Part shown: one piece after another, positions 15,054 to 55,720 of the stretch | Numbering within the stretch: the first letter of the stretch is position 1 | Layout of the letters: each line of letters opens with the position of its first letter | NCBI RefSeq assembly: GCF_001194135.2 | Contig: NC_068981.1 | Span: 126,989,097 to 127,053,096, forward strand | Length of the DNA stretch: 64,000 nucleotides | Direction: 5' to 3' | DNA from: Octopus bimaculoides | Taxonomy: Eukaryota | The notes under the pieces: generated by a model | The model's input: the letters and a program-made list of their open reading frames with translations, nothing else | The model's database searches: none | Told to the model about the DNA's origin: nothing | Program-made: the position numbers and the translations under genes

Positions 15054-15954
15054 GTATGTAATCACTACAGCAACAACAACAATGGTTCTGAGGATTCCTT
15101 GTTGTTTTGTTTTCTCTTTTTTCAATTTGCCTTTTACTTAGTTTTGCTTATCCTTCTTGATAGAGGGAAACCTTAGTGGCATGAGAATACTTACAGAGAG
15201 TGAGTAAAAGAGTCTACGTAAGATGAAGCTATTAAACTGTAAACAACACACATCTTTACCAAGCAATTTTGTCATTTTCACTGTTGGACTGACCAAAGCC
15301 TTGTGAGTGGATTTGGTAGATAGAAACTGAAAGAAGCCCATCATACATATATGTATATATCTATGTGTGTGTGTCTGTGTTTGTCCCCCACCACCACTTG
15401 ACAACCAGTGTTGATATGTCTAAGTTCTTGTAACTTAGTGGTTAGGCAAAAAGAGACCGATAGAATAAGTAATAAGCTTTTAAAAAATGAGCCCTGGAGT
15501 TGATTTGTTTGACTAAAACCCTTCAAGGTAGTTCCCCAGCATAGCTGCAGTCAAATGACTGAAACAAGTAAAAGATAAAAGATTATTTGTAAGAATCTCA
15601 GAAAAAATGCTTGGCATTATTTGTTCTCGCTTTTATGCTCAAAGTTCAGATCCTGCCAAGGTCTACTTTGCCTTTCATCCTTTTCAGTTCCATAAAATAA
15701 GGTACAAATCAAAGTCACAAACTGAGATCAATGTAATCAACTAAACCCNNNNNNNNNNNNNNNNNNNNNNNNNNNNNNNNNNNNNNNNNNNNNNNNNNNN
15801 NNNNAGTTTATAATTTTTAAAGTCTCTCTATTTATTAATTGCCACAGATTTCAATAAAAGAAATATCAATTGTATAACAAAGAACACAATTATTGTGAGT
15901 TCACAACTAGTGTATTTTTTCATGATTAAAGTTGGGATGTAGAGAGTGATGTTT

Positions 15955-16186
15955 TACACAACATCTCGTGGCTGTTGCCAGTTCCGCCTGACTGGCCTTC
16001 GTGCTGGTGGCACGTAAAAGCACTCACTACACTCTCAGAGTGGTTGGCGTTAGGAATGGCATCCAGCTGTAGAAACTCTGCCAAATCAGATTGGAGCCTG
16101 GTGTAGCCATCTGGTTTCACCAGTCCTCAGTCAAATCGTCCAACCCATGCTAGCATGGAAAGCGGACGTTAAACGATGATGATGAT
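15955..16186 (+). mobile_element. (GAT)n-tailed retroposon 3' module, family B (young copies 18585-18746+, 39485-39714+, 45491-45803-, 53604-54110-, 55245-55543+; older copies near 4160, 5590, 6630, 22545, 42740, 44560, 52420)
   Basis: Near-identical GGCGTTAGGAAGGGCATCCAGCTGTAGAAACTCTGCC...GCATGGAAAGCGGACGTTAAACGATGATGAT copies. Confidence 0.85.
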
Positions 16187-26480: not shown

Positions 26481-28639
26481 CAATTCCAATTTTTTTTTCA
26501 CTCACTGGAATAGCCATTTAGGATAGACTTATGGAAAATGCTTTGCTGTGTGGTAAGTAGCTTGCTTACCAACCACATGGTTCCGAGTTCAGTCCCACTG
26601 TGTGGCACCTTGGGCATCTTCTACTACAGCCTCGGGCCGACCAAAGCCTTGAGTGGATTTGGTAGATGGAAACTGAAAAAAGCCCGTTGTATATATGTAT
26701 ATATATATATATATGTATGTGTCTGTGTTTATGTCCCCGTAACTTAGTGGTTCGGCAAAAAGAGACCGATAGAATAAGTACTAGGCTTACAAAGAATAAG
26801 TCCTGAGGTCGATTTGCTCGACTAAAGGCGGTGCTCCAGCATGGCCACAGTCAAATGACTGAAACAAGTAAAAGTTAAAGGAATCCGATTGTATAGGCTG
26901 GCAATTTTAAAGACAAATCTATATATCTATATATCTGTAAAGAATTCAATCTTCTTTATCAGTATAAAGTGCTAACAAATAATTTCAAATCAACAGATTT
27001 TACAGTTCATTGAATACACTACATAAATTTAAACTGTTGAGTAATTTCATATACCTTCAAGAAAGGATGCTTTATTCTAATTAAAGACATTATCAATTGG
27101 TCTAAATTAATCATATTTAGATACATTCTTTTGTTACCTATACAGCACAGTAAATACTTCAGACAATTTTCAGGCATTCTCACAATTGAAATATAGTGAT
27201 ACAATTATACTGAGCTTAAATTCACCATTTGAATCAAATGCTTTCTTGCTTTATCTTGATTCCTTACCACTTGATGTTCAGTCTAAATTTGTGCCCATGT
27301 TTACATCTCCATGTGTTTACCTATGCGTTTTATATGTTCCTTTCATTCTTGAGTGTGTATGAATAGTATATGAATTAAAACCCTAAACTAAAAGTATATA
27401 TAAAATAATTTATTATACATTGAAATTATTATTACATGATGAAGGCTGCGAAACAGCTGTAATCCTAAGGATGACAAGTGGTTAAATAAATATATTCACC
27501 TCTCACACTGCATGACGCTTTATGGCGCATATATATATATATATATATATATATTATTTTTTCATTTAATGTTTTTTTTATTTATTTTATAAATGGATAT
27601 TTCCCTTAATACATTCTTCTTTGTGTAGCAAAAGACCAGAGTATTTGTAAGGAAGAAATTATTCATTTATAAGCATGCTTTGAAGAGAGAGAGAGAGAGA
27701 GAGAGAGAAAAAAAAGATAAACAAATGTAAAAAATTCAATGTGGTATTTACTTCAAATCATAGAAATTTTTTAAAAATCAAGCAAAAATGATGGCTGACT
27801 TAAAGAAGACAGTTTTGACCATAAAAAAAGACTGCAAAATGTTAAGTATATAAGTATGTACAAAATATGTGGCTATACTGTTTATAAAGTAAATAGCATA
27901 CATATGTGTATTTGTGGTGAATAGAAAGTCATTGTAGCATTGATATTAAAAGACAAAGATAAGTTTCCAGGAAACTGAATCTCACAACAGGCTTCATTTC
28001 ATTAAAATTGTTCATAAATTGTATGAAGTAATAAACATCACAGCATCTCACTGTTGTTTCTTTACGTATCTTAAATAATCTTATGCTTGTATAAAAAATA
28101 AAAAATTACTTTGAAGCCTAATATCCATTTTAGAGACAACTTAGATAAGTAGCATTTTAAAAATAAAAAGAATTCAAACATTTGAATAATTTGTTGAAGT
28201 ATTTTTTACATTTGACATCCTTATTACAACACTTAAGAGGTAATAGTTGTATATATTTTGAGCAAAGTAGTTGTATACTTTTGCCTGGCTATTTCAAATA
28301 TAGGGTTTTGCCTCTCCTTACTATAAGTTGGCTGAATGTACAACACAAAATTTCTCTACATATCTTGGTTGTCATCTCATCTGTGTGTTCAAAGTGCTTG
28401 AAACTAACCAAACAACTTCACAAATATCTTCTTCACTATTGCTTTTATGGACATTGGTTGTTAGTGCATTGGAGAGAATACTTGTAGCATTTGTTTCAGC
28501 TTTGTCCTGATTTAAAACCTCACCTACGTTAGCTTTGTCTTTTATCATTTCAGGGTCAATTAATGTTATCAGTTCAGGTAAATAGATTTTGGTAATATCT
28601 GTTTTGTTCAATTCTATATTTAAGAGATGAGGAATTATG

Positions 28640-28928: not shown

Positions 28929-31737
28929 TTTGTTTTGTTTCTGTGCATTCTGAATTCAAGTCCTGCCCTCTGTTACCAGCAAAAATGGTGAAAGGCCTGT
29001 GAAAGTCCTTAAGCAAATGCTTAAGTATTCCAGTTGGATCAATCTCGAGGAGAAAGCAAGGAAATGGTCGAGTCCTTGGGTACTCGATGAATAAACAATT
29101 TTCATTAGTTAATTGTGAAGACTAGCATTGTTAACAGTCTTCACAGACTCACCTAAACTGAAAGACATTTTGATAAGATTAATATAAGTGATATTTAGTT
29201 TGAATTTAGACCAAGAGAAGAAAACATAGGGAAGGAAGGAATTCAACAGGATAGAAATGAGTATCTGGAAAGAAGGGATTAAGCACTCATTAACAATAGA
29301 AGTTTGGGAAGAGGGATACAATAAAATTGGTGGAAAGCCTGCTGAATTAAGTGGGTTTATGTTGTGGTACAGAAATGATGAATCCACCAAATGAAATTAT
29401 GGTGATGATGATAAAAAAAAAGTGAAAAGATATTGGACAAGACTGTAGAGTATAACTTGCTAATTTGGGATATATTCATATTTTAACATTTTACATGTGG
29501 TCAAACAGTACCAGTACATGGCAGGTAACCAATCCAAGATGTGCAAGGTGAGAAGAATTCTGAATAACTGAGACTTCATTAAAACCAGCAGATAAAGTCA
29601 AGTGTTAAGCTATATCATGATTATGAATTGCAGCGAATTAAATACTGATACTTCAAAATCTTTAATTTCATTACTATTACTCATTGTGTAGTCAATCTTC
29701 AAAATTTTGGGGTTTATTTACTCAACTCTAATATTTGCAATATTATTTCAAACTCTCTTTCTTTTTTATTTAATTAGTACAGAAAGTCTGAAAAGTACTT
29801 GGTACAGGTCTACCATTTTTCAAAGACCATTTCCACGAACAAAATGGTAAACACTAAATATTTTAATACTTGCCAATAATTCCCAATAAAAATAGCGACA
29901 GAATTATAATTCTTATAAAAATACCAACCACTTATAAAATATAGTTACTTTATTTACACTATATTACATGCATATTTTTGTATTAGGTTTATGTGTATGT
30001 ATGTAGGTATGCATATACATATACATTACACATTTGAGAATATTCGCTAGTTTGGGCATATTTGTATATATGTTAGTGGATATATTATACATTTATACAA
30101 TATATATAATGTATGCAAGAATATATACCTGACTTACACATGCTACATGCACACATACGCACCATCACATATACATGTGTAAATATATTAAAGATTTTAA
30201 GAGTTATAATAATAGTCAAAATGACAATTTCTAACATAGGCACAGAATCAGAAATTTGTGGAGAGGGAACAATTGATTATATCAACTCCAGCACTCGATG
30301 GTACTTATTTCATCAACCCCAAAAGGATAACAGGCAAAGTCAACCTTGATATATTTGAACAATATTTAATAGAGTTAATAATTTCTAATATTGTACATTG
30401 TTGTAAGATAAAAATTAATGTTAGAAAGGAAACGATGGCTTATACATTCAGCCACATTACTCTATATCACTGGCAATAGCTATTTACTGATTAAAATAAT
30501 GTGACCTACACATATAGCACCATGTGAGTCAGAAGACATTGGTAACAGCATTCTTTGATAGAATCATATAAGCACAATTACTCTGGAATTTTCTGGCTAA
30601 TCTTCTCTCTCTTTCTCAGGAGCATTTAAACAACTATTTTCTCCAATCATTATTTATTACAAAAGAAAAATTTCTTCTCAAATAATATCACTAGAGTAAA
30701 TTAATAAATTAAATCTTTGATATAAAAATGTTGAAAAAAAGTAAATTATTAGTAAAAATTTCCTTTCATATTGTAATAAATATAATTTCAATATGTGTAC
30801 AAATTTGTGCATATATGTATATACAGCAGTGAGCTGGATATAGTCCACATGAAATGGCTAACAACCAGTTCTCATTAAAAAAAAAGTTTTGCTAGAAACT
30901 GAAGAGTGACTCAAAAAAGTTGATCAGTTATGCCACACAGTCAACTGACTCCACCTACCTACACTACAAAAATTCAGTTGGCCCTTTGATGCTTTGAAAG
31001 TTTTAAGTTACTGTATTTGTAGCATAAATATCTCTATTTTAATGTTCAATTGCGAAAACGTAGTTCAAAAGTTATTTATGGTGATGAGAGTAAGGATATG
31101 CGTCAGTGTATGAATGCATGTAACTATGTATTGGGGAGTAATTGTCTGTTTGCATATGTTCCCACTACCACTTCTGCCAGCATTCCTCAGCCTCTATACT
31201 TCTATCTCACTCTCCTCCCTGCAATATTTTAGCAGGTCATCTTAACTGTAACACTGTTGTTTGATGTATTGTACCTGTCTTCCTAAAAAAACTTTCATGT
31301 CACTTTAACTGCATCTCCTTTTCTGATTGTTTGAAGGATGAATTTATCAGCCTAATGTTCAGCTTTTTTCACCTTCCTCTTTCATCAGCATACTTCCATG
31401 GCATTTTGTACTCTCATACCATCCATCTCCCCACTGAATCAATCAAGTTCAGTTTAGTTCAAATTTCCTCACTTTCAGACAAAGGGTAATCAACAAAACA
31501 GTATTGCTACAGTCCACACAGCAAAGAATTTCATAAATCTCAACCATATACCAATTGATTTTTTTGCTGATACAGACTGTTACCACATTCACCTGACACT
31601 GGATTACATCTCAATTTAATATTATATTGCTGAATTCAGAATTTTTGCCTAAAATTTTGGCTACTAAGTAAACTGGTTGTTAAAGTTTTGACAGCTAAGC
31701 AAACAAGTTGTTAAAAGTTTAGTAGCTCACCATTACA

Positions 31738-31775
31738 TACATACACACACACACACATAAATACATAATACACAC

Positions 31776-31812
<37 letters not shown>

Positions 31813-31857
31813 ACATTTATATATATATGTATATTTATATATATATTATATATATAT

Positions 31858-31888
<31 letters not shown>

Positions 31889-32329
31889 NNNNNNNNNNNN
31901 NNNNNNNNNNNNNNNNNNNNNNNNNNNNNNNNNNNNNNNNNNNNNNNNNNNNNNNNNNNNNNNNNNNNNNNNNNNNNNNNNNNNNNNNNNNNNNNNNNNN
32001 NNNNNNNNNNNNNNNNNNNNNNNNNNNNNNNNNNNNNNNNNNNNNNNNNNNNNNNNNNNNNNNNNNNNNNNNNNNNNNNNNNNNNNNNNNNNNNNNNNNN
32101 NNNNNNNNNNNNNNNNNNNNNNNNNNNNNNNNNNNNNNNNNNNNNNNNNNNNNNNNNNNNNNNNNNNNNNNNNNNNNNNNNNNNNNNNNNNNNNNNNNNN
32201 NNNNNNNNNNNNNNNNNNNNNNNNNNNNNNNNNNNNNNNNNNNNNNNNNNNNNNNNNNNNNNNNNNNNNNNNNNNNNNNNNNNNNNNNNNNNNNTATATA
32301 TATATATATATAGACACACACACACACAT
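31738..32329. repeat. (TA)n/(CA)n microsatellite spanning a gap, representative of many such tracts
   Basis: Directly visible; similar tracts near 4805, 10085, 18130, 27530, 55730, 59350 and 61510. Confidence 0.9.
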
Positions 32330-32641
32330 GTATGGTCATGTAATTTTAAATTCTAAATTTTAGATTGTTTCAAAATTTGTTTACTTTATTCAAAGATATT
32401 CTAACACTTAAAAGTTTATCTAGTTTCTCAGAATTTCATTTCATACTTGACATACAGTGTTGTTTCCTTTCAATTTCACAGATCAAACAATTTTATTTCA
32501 ATTGGTCAAGACAAAGTAAAAAAATATTAAGAAACAGCTTTCTTCATCAAATTTTTTTGCTGTTGTAATTGCATTGTTTTCTGGGTGGTTGTTTTTTTTT
32601 TTTGTACAGAAAGAAATTTGCATTTAAAAGAGAAATAATAT

Positions 32642-35268
32642 TTAAGATTCAGAAACAGAAGCATTGCTAGATTGTTGCTGTTGTTGATCACTTTGAAAAG
32701 TGTTTTCTGAAAAGGCCACTGACTGATTAGCATCAATTTTAGGTCGGGGTTTGACTGCATGACCTGCAACAACAGTATTACTACTAGTTACAATAGTCAA
32801 AGGTTTCGAAGAAGTAATTGCTTTGCCAGCAGTAGTTACAACAGAAGAATAATTAGAAGCAGAAGCTATGCCTAAACTTTGTCCAAAATTTGAAATACCC
32901 GTGGAACCATCTGCTGAGATACCTGCCAAAGATAGTTTCCGTAATTCAGCTTGCGTCCGCTGCCCTGAATCTATGTTCAGTAAAGCAGCAATAGTGTTTA
33001 GACGTGGACGAGTGGGTGCTGTTGATGTTGATACTGCTGCTGCTGCTGAAATGTGGCTGGCAGCAGTAGAACTGTGGCTTGTTGACTGAGTTAAGGCAGT
33101 ACTGCTAGGAAGAGAAACACTACTCAAAGACAACTTGTGAAGATTAAGTTCTTGGGTGGGAAGTGATGGGAGTATTGATGCAGATGTTGCAGCTTCTGTT
33201 GCTGAAGACACTAGCATGTGCTGCAGTAAAGAGTTATTGGTTGCAACAGTGCTGACAACATCTGACTGCTGAGGTGTACTCATGGCACTACTTGAATTCT
33301 TCACAGAAGAAAATCCTAATAGCTTTTTATGAACTAACTGACTCTCTTTGCTGGTAGACTGAGAGATGGCAGCTCTAACTGCAGACAAAGAGGTGTTAAC
33401 TAAATCTAACGTTTGTTTATCATCTTTCTCATTGAGTTTTCTTTGTGCATCAAATTGCTGCACAGATTGCATCGGTGTCTTTTGGAGGAGAAGTTGTGAA
33501 ATTTGGTTGGTTGCCAGAGAGTTTACACCTGACTGCGGAGTAGTAATTGTATGTGTACTAGATACAATATTAGTTCCTGAATCAGTTGAAACAGTTTGTA
33601 AAGTATTCCAATTAACTCCAGAATTATAAGAAATGGATGAAGGCAATGACATTTCAGTCCCTTTAACAAATGCTACATTTGATTTATCAGTGACACCTGA
33701 TGAAAGATGACTTATTGCATTGGCATCTTTTCGTCCAGCGATGGAAGTTAAAATCATTTGTGCTTTCTCAGCAATAGCAACTGAATAAGGTGGAGGAGGC
33801 TTTCCAATTATTGCTGACTTTGGCATCATATATGATTGTGTAACAGCAGGATCACCTATTGACCCTGCATGGGATTGGGAGAAACCCACTGGAACAGATG
33901 ATTGGACTTTTGGGACACTGGAGTATTGCTGGGCAAGGGATACAATGTCTCCTTCTGAATGTTGAGAAAAACGTTCTTGGTTCTGAAGTGATGACAATTC
34001 TCTGGATTGTATTAAAGATGACAATGTTTGCTTTTCTTGTTGTGTCAGACTACTAAGGTCAAATGATCGCACCATAGACGACAATGTCAAACGTTCCCGA
34101 GTGGATGAAGGCGAAGGTTCATTTGCCTCAGATGCATTTTGATGAGGCACTTGTTTAGAGCTAGTTAAATTATTAACACCCTGAACCATAGAGCTTAGAG
34201 TGAATCGCTCTTGCTGAGCAACAGAAGTTTCACCACTGGTTTGCAATAAGTTCTGAGATAAAGTTCTGCTTTGTGGAGTTAGTAAAGTACCACCTTGACT
34301 GAGTGAAGTTGCTGTGGCGGTGGCACCACTGGAAGATTGACCAGACACAGCGACACTTCTTAACTGGTTTGCATTCAATTCCATAATTGTCTGTGATGAT
34401 AAATCTACTTCGCTACCGCTCGTTAGAGAAGACTTTCGGGTCAAAATTGGTCCTGACGATCCCGTTTGTGGAGTGGTGGCCTGTGTAAAAATGGAAAGTT
34501 TGTAATCTGGTGAGGAAATCTTATTTTGAGAAATTCCAAGAGTTTGTGCAGTGAGTACATCATCCTTGCGCAGAAGTGAAGATTGCTGTGTGCCAGCTGG
34601 AGGAGACTGTGATATAGAGGTGACAGGTGACAGGGCAATATTAGAAGGATTAGTTGAAGGAACATGGCTTCTTGAAGATAACTGATTGTGAAGAGTAGCA
34701 GCGTTAACCTGAGCAATATTTTGAGCTGAGCTGATAGGAATCTGAGTGTTGTGAAACAGAGTTTGGGTGGTGGGAGACTGAGTTGGCTGCGATTGAGATG
34801 TAAGCAATTGGTTAGCCTGTGTGGTCAGAGAAAGGGATTTTAATAACTGGGGGTGATTTGCTTGGTTTGCACGGGCTTTGGCTGCCTGAAAATACTGGCT
34901 AAGGCTGGCTCGGTTCATTTGTGACAAAGCTGCTTGTAAAGCTGAAGGAGCTCCTCTTGGCTTTGCTAACTGAACTGAGGCTGTGGCACTCAGCTGCAAC
35001 TTACTAGTGGGCTCTTGAGATGGTGACTGACTAACAGCTTGCTGGGGGATTGTCTGACCCATTAAGGCCTGTGGAGATGATTGACTAATGACAGCCTGGG
35101 GTGAAGCCTGACTAGATGGAGTCTGTGGAGATGCTTGACCTACTGATGCTTGTGGGGAGGGTTGGCTAAGGACTGACTGTGGGGAGGCCTGGCTTACTTG
35201 TGACTGGGGTGAACTTTGCCCTATTGGGGTTTGGTTTCCTATCTGAGCTTGCTGCTGTTGCTGTTGTT

Positions 35269-35299
<31 letters not shown>

Positions 35300-37803
35300 A
35301 AGAACTAACTGCTGAAGCTGTTGCAACTGCTGCTGCTGCTGCTGTTGCTGTAGCTGCTGTTGCTGCATTTGTTGTTGCTGTAGCTGCTGCTGTTGTAATT
35401 GCTGCAGTTGCTGCTGTTGTAGTGCCAGCTTCTGAGATGCTGCTTGATTTGCAAGCTGCTGGGCAACACGTTGCGGAGAGACAAACTGTCGTGTTTTCTG
35501 TTGTTTGATCAGTTGAGTAAGCTGTTGCGTTATCTGCTGCTGCATCACACTTTGCGACTGCTGCACACTGGACACCGGCTGACCAGCAACTTGAGATGTT
35601 TGTTGCTGCTGCTGCTGTTGTTGTTGTAATTGTTGTTGTAGCTGTTGTTGTTGCAGTTGTTGCTGCAATTGTTGTTGCTGTTGCAGTTGTTGTAGCTGCT
35701 GTAATTGATGTTGCTGCTGTTGTTGCTGCTGCTGTTGTTGCTGCTGCTGTTGTTGCTGTTGCTGCGACATTTGCTGCTGCGCTAAACTGAGTTTCAACTG
35801 TTGCTGACTGACAGTTTGTTGTTGATTTAAAGCTTGTATTAACTGTTGCTGCTGCTGTTGTTGCAATTGCTGCTGCTGTTGTTGCTGTTGTTGTTGTTGC
35901 TGTAATTGCTGCTGTTGCTGCAATTGCTGTTCCAATGAGGTCTGAGCCTGTAACTGGGAAGCCTGTATCACTTGTTGTGATGTCACTTGGGATCTTTGCT
36001 GCTGCTGCTGCTGCTGTTGCATTTGTTGCTGCTGCTGCTGTTGTTGTTGTTGTTGCTGTTGTTGTTGTTGTTGTTGAAGCAACTGGTTTATCTGCTGCTG
36101 AGTAGCCTGAGATAGTTGCTGTGGAGCAGACTGAGCCTTCTGTTGCAGCAGTCCCTGGCTAAGCTGGGCTTGTAGAGAACTAAAACTAGGCTGACTAGCT
36201 GCAGGTGATGCAGCATATGGAGAAGTTGGGGGAGCCCTTGGCTTACCTGAGGCTACATGTTTAGATTTGTCTGAACTTAACTTTGGTTTGCCTGAAGCAG
36301 CCTGGCGGGGTTTAGTAATCAAACCAGTCTGGGGTAGATTCTGTTGGACTACCCGGTGTGCAGAAGCCGTCTGAGCCATTGGATTGGACTGGAGTGTAAT
36401 TGGAGACAGAGCACCAGTTTGTAAAGGTGACGGAGCAGTTGAAGACAGTGGAGACTGGGCAGCAGTAGGGGATGGGACAGGTTGATTCATTGGGGACAGG
36501 GCCGGCTGCTGTAAAGGGGACATTGAGATTTGTGTCATGGGAGAATGTGTGTGCTGACTCATAGGGGACTGAGTGTGTTGACTCATTGGAGAGTGAATAG
36601 TTTGACTGATAGGTGACTGGGCAATAGGAGACATAACAGGATGAGCTATGGGTGATTGGACAGGTTTTGCCATGGGTGAATGAACAGGTTGAGGCATGGG
36701 TGAATGAACAGGCTGTGCCATAGGGGACTGTATGGATTGGATCAAAGGTGAGTGGGCAGGATGCATCATTGGTGATTGGACAGGTTGGTTCAAAGGTGAC
36801 TGAGCAGGAGATTGTACAGGTTGAGCCATAGGAGAATTAGCAAGATAGGATTGAGCTGCTCTGACCACAGAAGGCTGTTGTGCAACCTGGGCAGACTGAT
36901 GAGAGAAGAGGGAAATGCTAGATCGTGAAATACCTGCCACCGAATGAGCTGATTGAGTATTGCTGGCAAAGTGTGAAGCCTGAGTAGATACTGCAAGTGC
37001 AGTGGCAGAAAGAGGAGAGCTGGCAGGTGCACCAATAGGAGAAGTAGGAGCCAAAGTGGTGCTGGTGGTAGTAGTAATGCTGGTGGTAGTAGTAGTAGTA
37101 GAAGTAGTAGTAGTAGTAGTAGTGCTGTTACAGCTAGCATTAGCTGTAGTGGTACCAGATAGTGATTGTGGCACATTTTGTGGAAGAGAAACCCTTGGTT
37201 TATTAAAAAGAGTTATATTAGAGGGGTAAGAGCTTACCATTGGTTCAGTCATGAGAGCTTGGGTTAGAGGTGTGTACTTCGAGGGGCTGACGACAGCAGT
37301 GGTCATGGCTATAGACAAACCAGTGGATGACCCACTTGTCTTGATGGGGCTTTCCACTGATTCTGCTTGAGTCACTTCGGTCGCATTGAACTCAGCATCG
37401 CTTGGAAGTATGCTTTGAGGAACTTTAGTAACAGTGGATGTAGTCTGTGCAGCATTTTTCTCTGCACTCTGACCAGTTTGAGATTTGGGACTGGATAATG
37501 TACGAGGAGACGAGGAGGTGGAACGTAAAGGTGGAGTGTATTTAGAACTCAAGAGACGATTGTGTGAGCTCTTTGCTCCAACAGATCGAGGTGTACCTGG
37601 TGGTGTTATAGAAGGTGCATACTTTTCAGCAGACATTGGCGTTCGAGGTGATGAGAAAAAACGTCCACCTGCTGATCCTCGAGCAGACTTTGGGGTACCT
37701 TTCTTTCGCTGGTCCTTTGTAGCTTCAGTGGCTTTCCTTTGTCGATTAAGATCGTCAAGTACTTTATCCATTCTGGCAACTCTCTTTTTGCCTTTTGATG
37801 AAC
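32642..37803 (-). CDS. PAGR1: PAGR1-like exon 4: end of PAGR1 core (GSSKGKKRVARMDKVLDDLNRQRK) plus ~1700-aa S/T/P/Q-rich tail
   Basis: ttttctcaatccAG acceptor at 37805-37804, phase 1. 5162 nt open to TAA at 32644-32642. Matches human PAGR1 TPGSS..KREARLDKVLSDMKRHKK. AATAAA candidates on - at 32492-32497 and 32385-32390. Confidence 0.88.
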
Positions 37804-38362
37804 CTGGATTGAGAAAAAAAATACCCATGAGAAAATGATAAAGACAAAAAATATAATACAATTTATTTTTCTATTTTATTGTCAAGATATTCCAGAGATG
37901 AATGCTCACCACCTAATAAACTGAAAAAATTCTGAGCAATGTCCACAACCATTTGTTCTATTCTGCATGTATCACTACTAAACACTCCAACCTTACAGAC
38001 TACATATCAAAGTTTTCTTATGGTCACAATACATCCTAAAATCACCTTAGTATGACTAAATACAGAACGAGATCATAGCATAGGTGAGACCATTTCATAT
38101 ATTCAATGTATTTGGTTAATAATCTGCTTTCCAGACCATTATATTTATATTGCTGAGACTGTACGCCTTCACTTAAATTTTTCTTTTTGCTGCTACTTTG
38201 GATCTATAATGCCATGCGAGTGCAGGTGCAATAGTTTATTTGTTGAAGAAACTGTTTTTCTATTTGGATGTCTTTCCTACTACTAACCACAAATATCAGG
38301 TGAGTGTTAAAAGTATATTTTTAGCAGTCAGGGAAACCAGAGCAAGGAATTAAGTATCATAG

Positions 38363-38755: not shown

Positions 38756-39720
38756 GTATCATAGTTAAGAACACAACAAAATGACAATAGAAAGATTTGA
38801 ACCTCTGCCATGTAGTTAGAAGATCAACACGAACTTCTCAGCCACTGTGCTTCATATTCTACAAGAAGAAAAATCTACTTTTCCCTGTAAGGACCAACTA
38901 TACAGTCAAAAGCCTCAATAAAATTAAGAGTTTATTTATCAGAAATATAGCGCAAGCAAACCAAAAACTCTGTTATCAGTGGTGACAGTTTTAATAATAT
39001 GCAGCTAAGGATTACATCAATCTCTAATACTCAAGAAACCTATCATAACATAGCGTTCATTATATGTGACAATAACAGATAATAAGATATCTATCACAGT
39101 TCTATCATAGCTGAGGGTTGGCGACAGGAAGGGCATTCAAGCTGTAAAAAATTTGCCTCAACAAATTTTGTCCACCCCATACAGGTATTGAGAAGTGGAT
39201 GTTGAACAATGATAATGGTGATGATGATAACCAGATTTTATTGATATGCTCATGCAATGGAAAAAGTAAAATAGTCTGCCTTAATCTCCCCAGTGACTTA
39301 GTGGTGACAGAGAGAGAATCCATACAGTCAGTTTGACTGCTAAAGAATGAAACTTACCAAAACAACCAACATAAGTATATATTTTTTTAAACAACCGAAT
39401 TAAAATTGACTCCTAAGCAATGAAGTGATTTCCTGTAACCTTTCCTTTATTTCATATCGAATATCTCACGTAAAATACACCATTTCGAGCATGGTCGTTG
39501 TCAGTACCTCCTGACTGGCCTTTGTGCCGGTGGCACGTAAAAGCACCCACTATACTCTCTGAGTTGTTGGCGTTAGGAAGGGCATCCAGTTGTAGAAACT
39601 CTGCCAAATCAGATTGGAGCCTGGTGTAGCCATCTAGTTCACCAGTCCTCAGTCAAATCATCCAACCCATGCTAGCATGGAAAGCGGACGTTAAACGATG
39701 ATGATGATGATGATCTAGTA

Positions 39721-41220: not shown

Positions 41221-41603
41221 GGCACAGGAGTGGCTGTGTGGTAAGTAGCTTGCTTACCAACCACATGGTTCCGGGTTCATTCTCACTTCATGGCACCTTG
41301 GGCAAGTGTCTTCTACTATAGCCTCGGGCCGACCAAAGCCTTGTGAGTGGATTTGGTAGACGGAAACTGAAAGAAGCCCGTCGTATATATGTATGTGTGG
41401 TATGTGTGTCTGTGTCCTCCTAACATCGCTTGACAACCGATGGTGGTGTGTTTAGGTCCCCGTAACTTAGCGGTTCGGCAAAAGAGACCGATTGAATAAG
41501 TACTAGGCAGCCAAAGAATAAGTCCTGGGGTCGATTTGCTTGACTAAAAGGTGGTGCTCCAGCATGGCCGCAGTCAAATGGCTGAAATAAGTGAAAGAGT
41601 AAA
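41221..41603 (+). mobile_element. tRNA-headed SINE, family A, full length (other copies 8060-8800, 10340-10560, 15280-15580, 18060-18450, 18760-19135-, 26545-26880, 42290-42460-, 45980-46270-, 55050-55230-, 55785-55920-)
   Basis: TGGCTGTGTGGTAAGTAGCTTGCTT..GGTTC head, internal (TA/TG)n tract, conserved GCATGGCCGCAGTCAAATGACTGAAACAAGTAAAAG tail. Confidence 0.88.
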
Positions 41604-43995: not shown

Positions 43996-44936
43996 ATAGA
44001 CAGACGATCTTCACAAAAGTTTTGTAAAGAGAGTTGAATATGCTTTGCTGAGGAGATCTAATACCAGTGAAACATGTCTGTTGCTTTCACCAGTCGGCTT
44101 TAGTAACAAAATGTATTGCCATCTGCATTCGGGATCACATGTAAAATCAAGTCACATGAAGCAAACTTAACCACAGCCATAACTGTGCCTGCCATATAAA
44201 CATTGTAAAATAATTTATTATAATGTTTTACCACTTCTACCAACTCACTATGCTATTTAATTTTACAATAAAAATAAAGTGAAATAAAATTTAAAAAGAC
44301 AGCATAAGTCCACTACCAACCAACTGAATAGCAAAAGTCTGAAATTCAAGGAAACTAGTGATTGTCTGTGTTGGTGACAATTAGTCTGCAGGCGAGTTCT
44401 TGAAAGAGTTTGATAATTTCAATTGCTGTAAGGAATAAATTCCCAGATGAAACCATTCTGGAATTTACTTCAACTTAATCTGAGAAAGAGTCAATGAGGA
44501 AGTCTCTATGCCAGCCAGTAAAGGAACCTTTACACAATCACAGCTTTTAGAAATAAGAAATCATCATCATCATTATTAAACATGTTTTCCATACTGGTAT
44601 GGTTGTATGATTTAACAAGAGATGGTAAGCCAGAGGATTGTGCCAAGCTCCAATGTCTGCTTTGGCATGGTTTCAACCGCTGGAACATTTCCTAATGCCA
44701 ACCACTTTACAGAGTGTATGATGTTTTTTTACATAGCATTAGCACTAGGAAATCTACTTCAAATTACATGCCCATCTTAAAGAAAGGAAAAGAAAAGGAG
44801 AGGATGGTCACAGTTGGATAACCTTTGCTCATAAGTCTGCACAATCAGGCCTGACCTGGAGCTCAACAACAACTACTTACCTGATCCTACAAACACACAC
44901 ATATATACATTCATGCAGTAAAACTATCTTGCTTAC

Positions 44937-45249
44937 TTTTTTTCCTCTTTGTGTTCTTCTATTTTCTGTTCCACAACTAACTTCTGTTCTATGTCCATAT
45001 CTTCATCCTCTTTCTCCACCTCAGGTGGCCTGCGACCAGGACATTTCCATTTAAGAACTGGTAAGCCACCATTGTCCAGTTTCTCAAACATTTCAGCAAC
45101 TTGATCCGGATAAGGGATCCAGAGGCCCTGGAAGACATTATTTGCATTGTATTTCTCATCGTCACTCACATCAACATCAATAATGTCTTCTTCGTCCTCT
45201 ACACGAGAACTCATTTTCCTCACCATCTGGGAAGATTTGGGGGAATTAG
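44937..45249 (-). CDS. PAGR1: PAGR1-like exon 2 (ANSPKSSQMVRKMSSRVEDEED..LWIPYPDQVAEMFEKL..PGRRPP..EEK)
   Basis: Strong polypyrimidine/AG acceptor at 45251-45250, GTAAGC donor at 44936, 313 nt. W.P.P..I..LYE.L and RRP pattern of PAGR1. Alternative starts at ATG 45226 or 45214. Confidence 0.88.
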
Positions 45250-46447
45250 CTAAAAAGAATAAAAAGAAAAAGAAAATAAACAATAGTAAAATTCTAAGAG
45301 GACATTTCTGTGTATTTAAAACATTCATTTTGTTTCTTTTTACATTTAACAAATTAGTTTTAAGGTTAAGAATGTTGGAATACTATATTCACATTCTTCG
45401 CAGAGCATTGTGATCTGCCTTAAGGCAAAGCATGTAACTCAGCTTGCCTCAATTTGTTACTCTTAATTCACTGACAATAAGTTAGCGAATCATCATCATC
45501 ATCATCGTCATTTAACGTCCGCTTTCCATGCTAGCATGGGTTGGACGATTTAACAGAGGACTGGTGAAACCAGATGGCTACACCAGGCTCCAATCTGATT
45601 TGGCAGAGTTTCTACAGCTGGATGCCCTTCCTAACGCCAACTACTCCGAGAGTGTAGTGGGTGCTTTTACGTGCCACCGGCCCGAAGGCCAGTCAGGCGG
45701 TACTGGCAATGGCCATGCTCAAAATGGTGTATTTTACGTGCCACCTGCACAGGAACCAGTTCGGCAGCACTGGCAATGATCTCACTCGAATGTCTTTACA
45801 CGTGCCAGAAAAAGATATCCACTACAAAAATAATTTCATCAATGATATACAAATAATATTCAAATAAGAATAAAATATTCCATTCCCACTTTAGTATAGA
45901 TCAACAAAGGTAAAATTCAGTGCAAAAAAAAAGAAAAGAAAAAAAATCTTAAATCTTTTTTATCATCTATCTTTTATTTGTTTCAGTTATTGGACAGCAG
46001 CCATACAAGGACACCACCTTTCAAGGCAGTTTTTAGTCAATCAGTCTCTTTTGTGAAACTGATAAATTACAGGGACATAAACAAACCAACACCATTTATC
46101 TATCAGTTGGGGGACAGACAACAAAGACAGACATACATAGGTATGTACATACACACTCACAGATATGTACACATGCACACATATATATATTATATGACAG
46201 GCTTTTTCAGATTCCATCTAGCAAATCCATACGCAAGACCTTGGTTGGCTAGGAGCTACAGTAGAAAAAACTTGCACTGAACCTATGTATGTTGAAAAAT
46301 TCTATAAATTCAAACATTTGTTCAGTTGTTTGGATATTACTTATAGCTTGGATATAGGACTGATAATGGCAGCTAGATTATAAATAAATACAAAAAAGAA
46401 AAGAAAAGAAAAACATACTACAAGACACATTCCTGCTTGTGAGATAT

Positions 46448-46677
46448 TGTTACGATCAGACAAATTAATAATGTAAGAAAAAGGGGTAAACTTCTGATTG
46501 TAACAACAAAGTGTTCAAACAGGGAAGTAAATGTTCATATATGGAGATTGGTCTAGGGGTATGATTTTCGCTTGGGTTGCGAGAGGTCCCGGGTTCGTAT
46601 CCCGGACGAGCCCCCAATTTGTTACGATCAGACAAATTAATAATGTAAGAAAAAGGGGTAAACTTCTGATCGTAACA
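46448..46677 (-). mobile_element. 230-bp mini-LTR (TRIM-like) element with 58-bp terminal direct repeats and a tRNA-Pro PBS
   Basis: Repeats 46448-46505 and 46620-46677 (57 of 58 identical), each TG..CA with a 13-bp terminal inverted repeat. ATAT on both flanks (46444-46447, 46678-46681). On -: CA-AAT-TGGGGGCTCGTCCGGGAT. Confidence 0.85.
46548..46616 (+). pseudogene. Retro-copied mature tRNA-Pro (positions 7-76 including CCA); not a functional tRNA gene
   Basis: TTGGTCTAGGGGTATGATTTTCGCTTGGGTTGCGAGAGGTCCCGGGTTCGTATCCCGGACGAGCCCCCA. Lacks acceptor-stem bases 1-6, has an encoded CCA, and shows G34, T37 and T58. Confidence 0.88.
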
Positions 46678-47442
46678 ATATTTTAACCATGCCTAATACT
46701 GCCTTGATCCAATCACCTCTTTCTTGAGAAGGAACATTTGTATAGAAATTAGTTCAAAGCAAATTCAAAGTTATTCCCTGTTTTCCAAAATTTGCACCCA
46801 AAAGAAAACCTGTTCAGTAGCTAGAGAATATAATACTAAAACCAGAACTTGATAGCTGACAGAATAGTCAATTACTACAGCAGGTATGGCTATGTGAATA
46901 AGACATATAATTTCACAATCATATTGTTCTCATCAAGCTTTTCAATTTTGCATTAGAATGAACTCTCAAAATCATTTTCAAAGACCTACTGGAAATCTAA
47001 TTTCTAATCTATGATATAGAAATGGGCCAAAGTGCTAGAAAGTCATAGTGAAAACAAATTTCTTTATGGTGTTTAGCTACAAACTAGATCTGATCAAACA
47101 GATGTCCTAGTTGTGACCATCCAATTTTTTGCGTGTCAAGGATTACACAGTTGAATGTATCATTCAATACTGAAATCTATGGAGATATGAAGGGAGAATT
47201 GACTGCTATTTCTACCAAATCAAATGCCTGCATAAAGGCTCCCTTGTTGGCTACTACAGATAGTAAAAATAAAGTTGTCATTAGTAAATCTTTAAACAAA
47301 GTTTGGCAAGTAAACTTTCAAACTACCTGAGTATTCTAGGTCAACCGTTACATAGCAATAAACCCAAGGTTGGGAGCTACTAATAAAATGACTTGGAAAT
47401 ACTACACTGCAGATCCATGCCATAACATAAAAAAACGATGAT

Positions 47443-47881: not shown

Positions 47882-50205
47882 ACAATGATAATAATGACCA
47901 ACAGACATACCAACTAAATATTCCTTCAAAAAATGTCAACTATCTTTAAATCTCAAGATGAACTGTTTGACAGCTAAACTATTAAAGTAAAGTCACACAA
48001 TTAAAGCTTAATGCTACTATCTTCAATGTGAGAATCACATCTTTTAAACTCCTAACCCTATTTGCTAATGAGCTAAGACATATTTCAGGTATCCTATCTA
48101 AAACTTTTGATTAATTAGTTTTAATTACTAGAGTTGGCACCAAGATTGAAGGTCATCATTTAATTTATATACATTTTGTTGTATCTTGGGAGACACTGGT
48201 TCAATTTCACTTCTTTATTTGTCAATTGATTAGCTACTTAACCAATAAACTAATTGATTGTTTGATTAAATATTTGATTAATCAATCAATCAAGCTGTGT
48301 TAGCCAAAGTCCATTTGTCACCATTCATGACTTCCTGAATGACATGCCCTGTCTACTCCCTGTCAAGCTTCTGCATACGATTCTGAAATCTTTTTAAATG
48401 TTGCAGAAATCTTTATCTTTTGGAAAAATAATTGCTAAGACCATGCATTATTTTTGTAGTCTTAATACTTAACTCAAAATGCATTACAGAAAAAACAGGA
48501 TGGCTACTGTTAAAAAAGAAAAAAAAATAGTTAATGCAATAGTTGTATTCAAAGCTATGAATCTTGGTAATTTAATTTTTATCACAAACATTTTATACTG
48601 AAATTTTAACTGTTTCCCACATTGGAACATCTAGTTATCTTTAATGATGACTTGTGCAGCGACTTGCTCAAAGTGGAAAAGTGTTGCACATCATCAACCT
48701 CTCTCTCTCTCTCATCACTGATCATCTTCAATCCAGTGGCAAGACCAGGTCAAGATAGCAGAGAATGGAGATAGGAGCAGTAGATGACCACGATGTCTTA
48801 TATGCCCCATCTGGCTCTCTGTACTGCAGCCGCTTTCCTCTCTGTTGAACCATGAAGGTTTCTTCCACAGTCTGCTGGATCTAGTCTTCACATGCATAAG
48901 TAGGAAAGTGACTAAAAACCGAACACTACAGGAGGGATGATTCAGTTTCAAAAACTGACTATGATCATTAATGTCACTCACAGAGCTAAAAGCCTCCTCA
49001 GATAAGACATGATTGTTACTTCCCATTTTCCATTCCTTATAAATCTGAATTAATGAACAAATTGGAAGAAGTGGTAAAGAGATGAAGGATATCAAGGGTG
49101 TGTGTGTGTGTGTGTGCACACGCACACACACACGTGTATACAATCACTCAGCATGTTTTGTGCTAAAATTCTGTTCAGCCAAAAGTGACTTGAGTATTCA
49201 ATAGCAACCTATAGAAGGCATGTTGATCCACTATGTATAAAATAAGGAGTCAACAATGGATTCTGCACAATGGTTACAGTTGTCAGATAAATTTAATCAT
49301 CACGTTCAGGGCAAAAAAAAAAAGCAACACTAAAGAATAATGTCACATAACCCATCAGATCATTTGAACTCACTTGTTGACCTTGTAGTCAGCATTGTAT
49401 CCAAGGCCAGGTTTGCAGTCAATCAAGCTCCACTTATCAGAGAATTTGAGCACAGAATTAAGAAACTAATAGTGTGTAATGAAATCATTGAGAATTAGGA
49501 AAAAGCTAATATTGTTAGGTACCAAGAATGTTATTTACAATTAGATTAGTCTAACAAAAGAGAAATCTTTTTATCAGAGTTATAATATGGCACCAACAGT
49601 GGAATAACCAGCAAATCTTCAACAGGTAGGCTAACATCTTATCAACTATACTAGGCTGAGATGCACATTATGAATGATGAGGATAAAGAGACCGAAATTG
49701 TCAGTCTGACAAAGCCTTGATTAGCTTGCTTCTGTTGAGGACACCACCAGAATTGACATCAGACAGAAGTAGACAAAAGGAAGCATATAACTAGACTGTC
49801 ACACAACATGTCAACGTGATCTTCAGTCAGGTAGCAGAGGTCTAATATATGAGATCACAATTCTGTGAATTGCATCTAGTTGTCTGACTAACTCGCCCAT
49901 TTTAGATCTGTTTAAAACTGACCATGAGTTTCATAACATTAATATTTCATATAGATAATCCAAAGAATGCATTAACCCTTAAGCAACCAGATTATTCTGT
50001 CAAATGCAATGCTTATTCACATTGCTTTGATTTAATCCTATATTATCTTATAGCTTTGAGATTTAAATGATGTGATGGTTTATTTTTAGAATGACATTGT
50101 AAGAGAAGTGTGAGAGGTCAGATCTGGTCAATTTGAACCCAAAACAGGCCAGATATGGCCAATTTAAATACTAGAGGGTTAAACAGATTTTTTTCATATT
50201 GAAAA

Positions 50206-53570: not shown

Positions 53571-55720
53571 ACTATGCTCTCTCCCCCTCTCTTCTATATA
53601 TATCATCATCATCATTGTTGTTTAACGTCCGCTTTCCATGCTAGCATGGGTTGGACGATTTGACTGAGGACTGGTGAAACCAGATGGCTACACCAGGCTC
53701 CAATCTGATTTGGCAGAGTTTCTACAGCTGGATGCCCTTCCTAACGCCAACCACTCCGAGAGTGTAGTGGGTGCTTTTACGTGCCACCGGCACAAAGGCC
53801 AGTCAGGCAGTACTGGCAACGGCCACACTCAAAATGGTGTATTTTACATGCCACCTGCACAGGAGCCAGTCCAGTGGCACTGGCAACGATCTCGCTCGAA
53901 TGTCTTTACACGTGCAACCGGCACAAGTGCCAGGAAGGCGACACTGGGCACAGGTGCCATCACAATTTCGCTTTCGCTAGCCCCAACAGGTCTTTGCAAG
54001 CCGAGTTTCGTGTCCAAAGAAGGAGACAACGTTGGCATGGGTCGAATTTAGTTTGATTTCGATTTCACTTGCCTTAACAGGTCTTCGCAAGCGAAATTTA
54101 GTGTCCAATGAAGGAAGGTACGCATACACACACTTCATCAAATGTCTAGGGTTTTTTTCCACACTAGCACAGGTTTGAACAGATTTATTTGGGCATAGGA
54201 CTGTATGGCCAAATTCTCTTCTCATTGCCAGGCCACAACCCTTGAGGTGAAAATAGTAGAACTAGTAAAACAATAAAAGTATCTCCTATATGATGTCCTT
54301 GGTCATCAATGACAAACAAACATTATATTATTATTATCATATGGTGGTTTAGCTGGCAGAATCATTAGCATGCCATGCAAAATGCTTAGCAGCATTTAAT
54401 CTGTCTTTACATTCATTCTGAGTTCAAATTCCACTGAGGTTGACTTTGCCTTTCATCCTTTCGGGGTTGATAAAATAACTCACTGTACTAAGTGACCTCA
54501 GTTACATACTGAAGTCACTGAGTACTAGGTTGATGTAATCGACTTCCCCATCCCCGAAATTGCTGGCCTTGGGGCAAAATTCGAAACCATTATTATTATC
54601 ATTAATATATGCACACATATGTATAAAAAATGTATCACTTAACATAAATTAATTATGAATAGTGACATAGAGTTAGATTAATGAATTCATGAATTCTGAG
54701 ACAAATGACAATCAGGAAAAGGAAGGTTGCTAATTAACTACTGTCAAAACTTTGGGTATGCAAGAGATAATATGGGAGCACCAGCAGGTCTTTGTAGTAG
54801 ATGTAGTGATTAGCAGTAACAGTGTCCTTGAAATGAATTCTTTTAAGTGTATGGAAAGACCCTTAAAACAGAAATTAATAGCATCAGTGATCTAATCAGC
54901 AGAGGAGGGATGGATGTTCTGAAAGCAAAATAACGAAAGTAAGAACAGAGCAGAAAAACTTCAAGAACCTATTACTTATGCTGACAACAAAAGGAATCTC
55001 ATCTGAGTAAAAATGCAGATTTTATGATACTTAACTTTTATTTGTTTCAGTCATTAGACTGTGGCCATGCTGGGGCATTGCCTTGAAGAATTTTAGTTGA
55101 ATAAATCGACCCCAGTACTTATTTTTTTGTAAAGCCTGGTACTTTTTATATCAATTTCTTTTGCTGGACTGCTAAGTTACAGGGACAATCACATCAATAC
55201 CAGTTATAAAGTGGTGGTAAGTGACAGACACAAAGACACTAAGAACTTTCGAGCGAGATCGTTGCCAGTGCTCCTGAAATGGCTCTTGTGCAGGTGGCAC
55301 ATAAAATACACCATTTTGAGCACGGCCGTTGCCAGTACCGCCTGACTGGCCTTCGTGCCGGTGGTCCGTAAAAGCACCCACTACACTCTCAGAGTGGTTG
55401 GCGTTAGGAAGGGCATCCAGCTGTAGAAACTCTGCCAAATCAGATTGGAGCCTGGTGTAGCCATCTGGTTTCACCAGTCCTCAGTCAAATTGTCCAACCC
55501 ATGCTAGCATGGAAAGCGGATGTTAAACGACGATGATGATGATATATATAAAGTAAATATATATACCGAAGTAAGCACATAAATGTGAAACAAGGTGGGG
55601 AAAAAATAGTACTCGAATACTATTTCACGTTCCCATTCGTCAGACAGACAAACAGGAATATGAAACTCTGAGTAGCAGTTTTTTGTGATATTCTTGCAGC
55701 TTTAATAATAATAAAGTGTG

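What the first reader, a model, noticed from the sequence alone, without database searches (positions are those of the whole stretch)
46548..46616. Genomic fossil of tRNA modifications: changes at I34, m1G37 and m1A58 plus encoded CCA
Seen: the anticodon loop reads TT-GGG-TT (G34 at 46574, T37 at 46577), the T-loop reads TTCGTAT (T58 at 46598), and the 3' end is CCA (46614-46616). Established: eukaryotic tRNA-Pro(AGG) has A34 edited to inosine (read as G), m1G37 and m1A58, both of which cause RT misincorporation. Eukaryotic tRNA genes do not encode CCA, GGG-anticodon Pro genes are essentially absent, and m1A58 normally stops plus-strand copying to give an 18-nt PBS. Inference: the RT read through all three modifications, leaving a record of tRNA modification in the genome. 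T27 and G57 differ from the human gene and may be species alleles.
Basis: partly seen in the sequence, partly recalled or inferred. Interest (0 to 1): 0.82.

Follow-up and report, generated by a model that had tools for sequence, protein, structure and literature searches.

The report
Octopus retroelement fossil preserving primer tRNA
A 230-base dead retroelement insertion in an octopus intron kept an almost complete DNA copy of the proline tRNA that primed its reverse transcription, with copying errors at the positions where that tRNA is expected to be chemically modified; the mechanism is already known from retroviruses, so this is a clean fossil and not a new kind of system.

Summary
Window 46548-46616 (+) is a copy of tRNA-Pro nucleotides 7-76, including an encoded CCA. 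Compared with 141 natural tRNA-Pro genes, it differs from the closest allele at four positions: 27, 34, 37 and 58. G34, T37, T58 and an encoded CCA were seen in none of the 141.

The copy lies inside a 230-bp insertion (46448-46677). The insertion is bounded by two 58-bp direct repeats with TG...CA ends and a 4-bp target duplication (ATAT). The orthologous site in Octopus vulgaris is empty.

On the minus strand the order is LTR, AAT, then the complement of the tRNA 3' end. This is a primer-binding site stretched from 18 to 69 nt. The best reading is that plus-strand strong-stop synthesis ran past m1A58, m1G37 and I34 of the primer. It left the tRNA at nt 7 and rejoined 42 nt before the 3' LTR, and the product was integrated.

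The same aberration is documented in defective HIV-1 proviruses (PMC12657518).

Two things remain unexplained: the very short LTRs and the missing polypurine tract. I could not test whether this is a one-off product or a member of a tiny non-autonomous family.

Interest is moderate. It is a new member of a known kind.

The parts
46444..46447 (.). Left copy of the 4-bp target-site duplication, ATAT.
   Evidence: The O. vulgaris orthologous site carries a single ATAT. The window has ATAT on both sides of the insert.
46448..46505 (-). 58-bp terminal direct repeat with TG...CA ends and 13-bp terminal inverted repeats. It is the 3' LTR in the element's sense orientation (window minus strand).
   Evidence: Direct repeat family D3 has 2 copies with 1 mismatch, and inverted repeats I7/I21 mark the termini. 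Exact 30-mer matches occur only at these two places in the window, with 0 expected by chance.
46506..46547 (-). 42-nt internal segment of unknown origin between the tRNA copy and the 3' LTR. A polypurine tract is expected here but is absent.
   Evidence: There is no purine run on the sense strand and no significant similarity to the LTR or the tRNA. No relatives were found in any held sequence.
46548..46598 (-). Read-through extension: complement of tRNA-Pro nt 7-58, which a normal primer-binding site does not contain. The deviating positions are 46598 (nt 58), 46597 (57), 46577 (37), 46574 (34) and 46567 (27).
46599..46616 (-). Canonical 18-nt primer-binding site, a perfect complement of tRNA-Pro nt 59-76 including CCA.
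   Evidence: It is identical to the 3' end of the natural tRNA-Pro genes plus CCA. This is the only such site in the window and in L001.
46548..46616 (+). The finding as given: a tRNA-sense copy of tRNA-Pro nt 7-76 with GGG anticodon, T37, T58 and encoded CCA.
   Evidence: Rfam tRNA match at 26.3 bits, E 0.003. It is 62/66 identical to the nearest natural allele.
46617..46619 (-). 3-nt spacer (AAT on the minus strand) between the 5' LTR and the primer-binding site.
46620..46677 (-). 58-bp terminal direct repeat, the 5' LTR in the element's sense orientation.
46678..46681 (.). Right copy of the target-site duplication, ATAT.

Best explanation
This is the integrated product of an aberrant round of LTR-retroelement reverse transcription that was primed by mature tRNA-Pro(IGG). 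Plus-strand strong-stop DNA normally copies only the last 18 nt of the primer and halts at m1A58. Here the reverse transcriptase ran on through m1A58, m1G37 and I34. It inserted dA opposite the two methylated bases (T58 and T37 in tRNA sense) and dC opposite inosine (G34). It left the tRNA at nt 7 and resumed on a template 42 nt upstream of the 3' LTR. The whole coding interior was therefore lost. The resulting 230-bp DNA still had both LTR ends and was inserted by an integrase into an intron, duplicating ATAT. It has no function now and is a fossil.

Shown: the insertion, the target duplication, the LTR pair, the orientation and length of the tRNA copy, and the non-random placement of the differences.

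Inferred: which enzyme copied the tRNA, that the differences are misincorporations at modified bases, and the template switch at nt 7.
For: - **Structure.** Two 58-bp direct repeats have TG...CA ends and differ by 1 base. CCA lies 3 nt from the right-hand repeat, so the minus strand reads LTR-AAT-TGG..., a primer-binding site.
- **Empty site.** The O. vulgaris orthologous site is empty with a single ATAT. This makes the element one clean lineage-specific insertion with a 4-bp duplication.
- **tRNA copy.** It runs contiguously for 69 nt from CCA to nt 7.
- **Comparison with natural genes.** 141 natural tRNA-Pro genes never show G34, T37, T58 or an encoded CCA.
- **Published RT signatures.** I34 reads as G. 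tRNA-Pro-AGG carries I34, and eukaryotes lack a Pro-GGG tRNA. A retroviral-type RT gives mostly T mismatches (PMC8062790). m1A causes dATP misincorporation (PMC4787781).
- **m1A58 in tRNA-Pro.** It is present and acts as the plus-strand stop (PMC11251516).
- **Direct precedent.** Defective HIV-1 proviruses carry primer-tRNA inserts of 7-54 nt at the deletion junction, and 5 of 44 have a change at position 58 (PMC12657518).
- **Stop at nt 7.** RTs often fall off at tRNA nt 4-7 (PMC5066629).
- **tRNA-Pro as primer in molluscs.** Mollusc TRIMs use tRNA-Pro primers and give 4-bp duplications (PMC10886601).
Against: - No polypurine tract lies next to the 3' LTR on the sense strand.
- The LTRs are only 58 bp, too short for an ordinary U3-R-U5.
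- No parent element or other copy was found, so the 42-nt segment cannot be shown to be the 3' end of a parent.
- The ATAT duplication is palindromic, so the junctions can also be read as a TA duplication with TTG...CAA ends.
- The octopus's own tRNA-Pro genes were not available.
- mim-tRNAseq found no G37 signal in human tRNA-Pro-AGG.
- T27 is unexplained.
- G9, often m1G9 in cytoplasmic tRNAs, is unchanged.
Confidence: 0.75

Rival explanations
1. The element is an ordinary copy of a very small non-autonomous LTR retrotransposon family (TRIM/SMART-like) with genuine 58-bp LTRs. The 69-nt tRNA complement is then an inherited feature. The read-through happened once in a founder, and this insertion was a normal transposition. 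The fossil-of-modifications reading still holds, but for the founder event.
For: Both LTR ends are intact, the duplication is clean and the two LTRs differ by only 1 of 58 bases. TRIMs occur in molluscs, use tRNA-Pro primers and give 4-bp duplications. A single normal transposition needs fewer unusual steps than several aberrations in one round.
Against: There is no polypurine tract, which is a defining part of TRIMs. No second copy was found in 64 kb of window, 45 kb of O. vulgaris, the metagenome or viral collections, or the protein database, although these searches cover very little octopus DNA. At 230 bp it would be shorter than the shortest reported group, SMART at 292 bp.
Confidence: 0.18
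2. The element is a DNA-transposon-like composite. Two copies of a 60-bp unit with 14-bp terminal inverted repeats (TTGTTACGATCAGA...) moved together with a TA duplication. They carried between them an unrelated 5'-truncated tRNA retro-pseudogene.
For: The terminal inverted repeats are perfect and long for an LTR. The junctions are equally compatible with a TA duplication. There is no polypurine tract.
Against: Neither 60-bp unit has its own duplication. The two units are direct repeats, not inverted repeats. It would be a coincidence that the CCA end lies 3 nt from a repeat end in primer-binding-site orientation. No poly(A) or LINE-type tail follows the CCA.
Confidence: 0.04
3. The sequence is a decayed tRNA-Pro gene or pseudogene, or a faithful cDNA copy, and its five differences are ordinary mutations acquired after insertion. 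They have nothing to do with tRNA modifications.
For: One LTR difference shows that some post-insertion mutation has occurred. T27 and G57 are transitions.
Against: The CCA is encoded, nt 1-6 are missing, and the copy sits inside an insertion that O. vulgaris lacks. From the LTR divergence only about 0.6 changes are expected in 69 nt. The chance that three changes hit positions 34, 37 and 58 is about 1e-4. Two of those three changes are transversions to T, as expected for misincorporation.
Confidence: 0.03

Closest known systems
Defective HIV-1 proviruses with tRNA(Lys3) inserts from deferred second-strand transfer (Hardy et al. 2025, PMC12657518)
   Same: Both have an intact LTR, then the primer-binding site, then contiguous further primer-tRNA sequence that ends at a large internal deletion junction. 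The HIV inserts reach up to 54 nt beyond the site; here the extension is 51 nt. Some HIV proviruses carry a change at position 58.
   Different: This case is in the germline of an invertebrate, not in somatic proviruses. The primer is tRNA-Pro, not tRNA-Lys3. The deletion removes essentially everything, the LTRs are only 58 bp, and three modification sites are recorded instead of one.
Cloned circular murine leukaemia virus DNA with a tRNA sequence between the LTRs (Colicelli and Goff, J Virol 1986). This is cited from my own knowledge and was not retrieved here.
   Same: An LTR, then a copy of the tRNA-Pro primer beyond the primer-binding site, then an LTR.
   Different: That molecule was an unintegrated circle from cell culture carrying the full viral genome. 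This one is an integrated 230-bp unit with a target duplication.
TRIM / SMART non-autonomous LTR retrotransposons (PMC10886601)
   Same: Tiny and non-coding, with two LTRs, a tRNA primer-binding site next to the 5' LTR and a 4-bp duplication as in animal TRIMs. tRNA-Pro primers are known in molluscs.
   Different: There is no polypurine tract. The LTRs (58 bp) and the total length (230 bp) are below anything reported. The primer-binding site is 69 nt. No family was shown.
Helenus (TRIMp3), TRIMs with a tRNA-derived sequence (PMC10886601)
   Same: An LTR-bounded mini-element containing tRNA-like sequence. It is found in molluscs and gives 4-bp duplications.
   Different: In Helenus the tRNA-like part lies inside the LTRs, in sense orientation, as a polymerase III promoter, and has diverged from any tRNA. 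Here it is internal, antisense to the element, nearly identical to tRNA-Pro and includes CCA.
Genuine eukaryotic tRNA-Pro genes (141 copies)
   Same: 62/66 identity over nt 7-73 to the closest natural allele, with D, anticodon and T arms.
   Different: The 5' acceptor strand is missing. It has an encoded CCA, a GGG anticodon, a pyrimidine at 37 and T58.

Membership tests
Functional tRNA-Pro gene | Complete cloverleaf with both acceptor strands, detected by tRNA finders | tested here: not met
   ARAGORN finds no gene. The Rfam tRNA match covers only model positions 7-64 and scores 26.3, below the gathering score of 29.
Functional tRNA-Pro gene | CCA not encoded, purine at 37, A58, and A, T or C at position 34 | tested here: not met
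   The window copy has encoded CCA, T37, T58 and G34. None of these occurs in the 141 natural genes.
LTR retroelement (structural definition) | Two terminal direct repeats ending TG...CA | tested here: met
   46448-46505 and 46620-46677 match at 57 of 58 bases.
LTR retroelement (structural definition) | Target-site duplication of 4-6 bp, confirmed by an empty site | tested here: met
   ATAT flanks the insert, and O. vulgaris has a single ATAT. A TA reading is also possible because ATAT is palindromic.
LTR retroelement (structural definition) | Primer-binding site complementary to a tRNA 3' end within a few nt of the 5' LTR | tested here: met
   On the minus strand the order is LTR, AAT, then an 18/18 complement of the tRNA-Pro 3' end, continuing to 69 nt.
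LTR retroelement (structural definition) | Polypurine tract directly upstream of the 3' LTR | tested here: not met
   No window of 12 nt with at least 11 purines exists on the sense strand. The 46506-46547 segment is pyrimidine-rich there.
LTR retroelement (structural definition) | gag/pol coding region (autonomous element) | tested here: not met
   Only 114 nt lie between the LTRs, so no gene is present at all. The ORFs are at most 56 aa and have no homologues.
TRIM / SMART | Multi-copy family of short LTR-bounded elements | tested here: inconclusive
   No second copy was found in any sequence within reach. No octopus whole-genome search was possible.
Helenus / TRIMp3 | tRNA-derived promoter sequence inside the LTRs | tested here: not met
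   The tRNA copy is internal (46548-46616). The 58-bp repeats have no tRNA similarity.
Product of deferred plus-strand transfer (primer read-through) | Primer-binding site followed without a gap by further primer-tRNA sequence that ends at a deletion junction | tested here: met
   A contiguous tRNA copy runs from nt 76 to nt 7. It is followed by 42 unrelated nt and then the LTR.
Product of deferred plus-strand transfer (primer read-through) | The sequence beyond the junction is a downstream part of the same parent element | not testable with these tools
   The parent element was not found, and no octopus genome database is searchable by DNA.
tRNA-derived SINE or LINE-made tRNA retro-pseudogene | A-rich or LINE-like tail and a variable-length duplication made by target-primed reverse transcription | tested here: not met
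   CCA is followed by ATT and the repeat, with no tail. The duplication flanks the whole LTR-bounded unit.

The most novel reading that the evidence does not exclude
The 230-bp unit may be a member of an active or recently active family of minimal LTR retrotransposons, smaller than any described. Such a family would have 58-bp LTRs consisting of little more than the two integrase-recognition ends, no conventional polypurine tract, and a fixed primer-binding site complementary to almost the whole tRNA-Pro. This would imply an unusual way of capturing the primer and of priming the plus strand.
Probability: 0.15. Interest if true: 0.65.

Novelty: new member of a known kind. Interest (0 to 1): 0.5.

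Why it matters
This locus shows that a germline genome can keep a readable imprint of tRNA modifications. For this octopus lineage it implies that the tRNA-Pro(AGG) which primed the element carried I34, a Watson-Crick-face modification at G37 and m1A58.

It also shows that the primer read-through seen in HIV-1 reservoirs happens in invertebrate retroelements and can reach the germline.

If such fossils are common, mining LTR/primer-binding-site junctions across genomes could give a cheap, purely descriptive window on two things. One is which tRNA isodecoder primes which element. The other is which tRNA modifications exist in species where no tRNA chemistry has been done.

As a single locus explained by a known mechanism, it is a neat example and not a discovery of principle.

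Tried and rejected
- **Other copies in held sequence.** I searched the window and the 45-kb O. vulgaris locus for the 58-bp repeat, the 42-nt segment and the LTR-plus-primer-site junction, by exact, mismatch-tolerant and short-word BLAST searches. Only chance hits came back.
- **Public collections.** The metagenome collection had no match to the repeat pattern. The viral collection had none to two patterns.
- **ORFs across the element.** Exact look-ups of the two ORFs spanning the element and a homology search with the 56-aa ORF found nothing.
- **Octopus tRNA-Pro alleles.** Searches of the literature for sequence strings carrying T27 or G57 found nothing useful. ARAGORN found no tRNA in the O. 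vulgaris locus.
- **Encoded CCA elsewhere.** No tRNA-Pro 3' end with encoded CCA occurs in the 121 held loci (546 kb).
- **Similarity within the element.** The 42-nt segment is not a degenerate copy of the LTR or the tRNA (shuffle p 0.4-0.9).
- **Folding.** The tRNA copy folded alone gives no cloverleaf and an unremarkable energy (z -0.96). This is uninformative because the acceptor strand is missing.
- **Rejected readings.** It is not a functional tRNA-Pro(GGG) gene, not a SINE, and not a Helenus-type element, whose tRNA-like part lies in the LTR. Polymerase III transcription from the A and B boxes would run antisense to the element and would not regenerate the LTRs.
- **Coding potential nearby.** Pfam scans of the larger ORFs in the window found no reverse transcriptase or integrase.

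Full report
**1. The observation**

The anticodon loop TT-GGG-TT has G34 at 46574 and T37 at 46577. The T-loop TTCGTAT has T58 at 46598, and CCA is at 46614-46616.

Rfam's tRNA model aligns 46548-46606 to model positions 7-64 with the D, anticodon and T arms (26.3 bits, E 0.003, below the gathering score of 29). ARAGORN and the gathering-threshold Rfam scan find no tRNA in the window. The reason is that the first six nucleotides of the acceptor stem are missing, so the copy covers tRNA nt 7-76.

**2. Comparison with real tRNA-Pro genes**

Human tRNA-Pro sequences came from two papers, found by searching with a string taken from the window. A pattern made from the window sequence, with N at the five doubtful positions, recovered 141 natural tRNA-Pro gene copies from metagenome contigs.

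| tRNA position | Window copy | 141 natural genes |
|---|---|---|
| 27 | T | C in all 141 |
| 34 | G | A 87, T 30, C 24, never G |
| 37 | T | G in all 141 |
| 57 | G | A 136, G 5 |
| 58 | T | A in all 141 |
| 3' CCA | encoded | encoded in none |

The window copy differs from the closest allele (AGG anticodon, G57) at four positions: 27, 34, 37 and 58. The chance that three of four or five random changes land on 34, 37 and 58 is about 1e-4. The two flanking repeats differ at 1 of 58 bases, so only about 0.6 later mutations are expected in 69 nt. One unexplained change (T27) is therefore unremarkable. A thrips small RNA also carries T27.

**3. Context**

The tRNA copy is flanked by two 58-bp direct repeats, 46448-46505 and 46620-46677. 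They differ by one base, start with TG and end with CA, and have perfect 13-bp terminal inverted repeats.

The host is an Octopus. A large polyglutamine-rich exon in the window is 95% identical to an O. vulgaris protein. The orthologous O. vulgaris locus aligns with the window at about 85-92% identity on both sides of the element.

O. vulgaris lacks the 230 bp. It reads ...gagATATtttaacc..., where the window reads ...gagATAT[230 bp]ATATtttaacc.... The unit is therefore one clean, lineage-specific insertion with a 4-bp duplication. Because ATAT is palindromic, the junctions can also be read as a TA duplication with ends one base further out.

The insertion lies in an intron of a PAXIP1_C-domain gene and has the same orientation as the gene.

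**4. What it is**

The CCA end is 3 nt from the right-hand repeat. Read on the minus strand, the order is LTR, AAT, and then the exact complement of the tRNA-Pro 3' end. That is the layout of an LTR-retroelement primer-binding site, except that the complementarity runs for 69 nt instead of 18.

After the tRNA copy come 42 unrelated nucleotides and the second LTR. No gene is present at all, so the entire coding interior is absent.

**5. How it most likely arose**

In normal replication the plus strand is started next to the 3' LTR. It copies the LTR and then the first 18 nt of the tRNA still attached to the minus strand, stopping at m1A58. tRNA-Pro carries m1A58, and without the stop the product contains extra tRNA sequence and transfer fails (PMC11251516).

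Hardy et al. describe the outcome seen here in HIV-1 (PMC12657518). [quoted passage not shown] This leaves intact LTRs, a tRNA insert of 7-54 nt and a large deletion. Five of their 44 proviruses carry a change at position 58.

The octopus element has a 51-nt extension and a deletion of nearly everything. The extension ends at nt 7, within the zone (nt 4-7) where reverse transcriptases often fall off tRNA (PMC5066629).

The directions of the three changes fit published signatures:
- Inosine 34 of tRNA-Pro-AGG is read as G, and eukaryotes have no Pro-GGG tRNA (PMC8062790).
- A retroviral-type enzyme gives mostly T mismatches at methylated bases.
- m1A provokes dATP misincorporation (PMC4787781).

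**6. What does not fit**

- *No polypurine tract.* The element's sense strand has none next to the 3' LTR. The only purine runs are on the other strand, inside the repeats.
- *Very short LTRs.* A 58-bp LTR is too short for a normal U3-R-U5. One possibility is a genuinely minimal LTR. Another is an LTR shortened by an aberrant first-strand transfer in the same round, which both LTRs would inherit. I could not tell these apart because no parent or sibling was found anywhere I could search.
- *m1G37 on the AGG isoacceptor.* mim-tRNAseq saw no G37 signal in human tRNA-Pro-AGG, so m1G37 on this isoacceptor is an inference for octopus.
- *G9.* It is unchanged, although m1G9 is common in cytoplasmic tRNAs.

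**7. Rivals**

- *A TRIM/SMART-like family with an inherited long primer-binding site.* This is the main rival (about 0.18). It would move the read-through event to a founder copy without changing the modification reading. At 230 bp the element would be shorter than the shortest reported group, SMART at 292 bp (PMC10886601).
- *A DNA-transposon composite with a TA duplication.* This is unlikely. The two units are direct repeats without duplications of their own, and the position of the CCA would be a coincidence.
- *Random decay of a tRNA gene.* The encoded CCA, the missing 5' strand, the empty site and the placement statistics all argue against it.
- *Helenus elements.* They carry their tRNA-like part inside the LTRs, which is not the case here.

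**8. Verdict**

The locus is a germline fossil of primer-tRNA read-through that records I34, a modification at G37 and m1A58 of an octopus tRNA-Pro. The mechanism is known, so this is a new member of a known kind, of moderate interest (0.5). The open points are the very short LTRs, the missing polypurine tract, and whether a family exists.

Noticed in passing
window 45491-45807 (repeat 45494-45776); L001 22120-22398; further copies at window 15967-16186, 18581-18738, 39467-39712, 53604-53886, 55262-55541: A ~280-bp interspersed repeat family shows presence/absence differences between the window species and O. vulgaris in both directions, within 1 kb of the mini-element. It was therefore active after the species split. 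It gives no tRNA signal in Rfam, and its class is unknown.
   Followed up: partly
window 26545-26874, 41228-41601, 15284-15575, 18745-19064, 8552-8785: A second interspersed repeat family of about 370 bp has several copies in both the window and the O. vulgaris locus (L001 13933-14293 and 40264-40634).
   Followed up: no
window 32642-37861 (-) and 44933-45352 (-): The host gene has a 1739-aa open frame, extremely rich in glutamine and serine runs, that is 95% identical to an O. vulgaris hypothetical protein. An upstream exon carries a PAXIP1_C domain (E 2.5e-7). The mini-element lies in an intron of this gene, in the same orientation.
   Followed up: partly
window 46499 versus 46671: The single difference between the two 58-bp repeats is T versus C within a CG/TG context. 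This is the usual decay of a methylated CpG and is consistent with a young insertion.
   Followed up: no
window 46550-46605 and 46681-46684: On the plus strand the tRNA copy keeps sequences resembling the polymerase III A and B boxes, and a TTTT run lies just outside the element. A short antisense polymerase III transcript is conceivable but untested.
   Followed up: no
window 46473-46490 and 46645-46662 (+): Each 58-bp repeat contains a 12-nt all-purine run (AAGAAAAAGGGG) on the strand opposite to the element's sense strand. Its meaning, if any, is unknown.
   Followed up: partly
window 49093-49136; 46127-46188; 31719-32363: There is a GT/CA microsatellite, a 22-bp tandem repeat of 2.8 copies, and a stretch with overlapping ORFs on both strands that is probably low-complexity sequence.
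   Followed up: no
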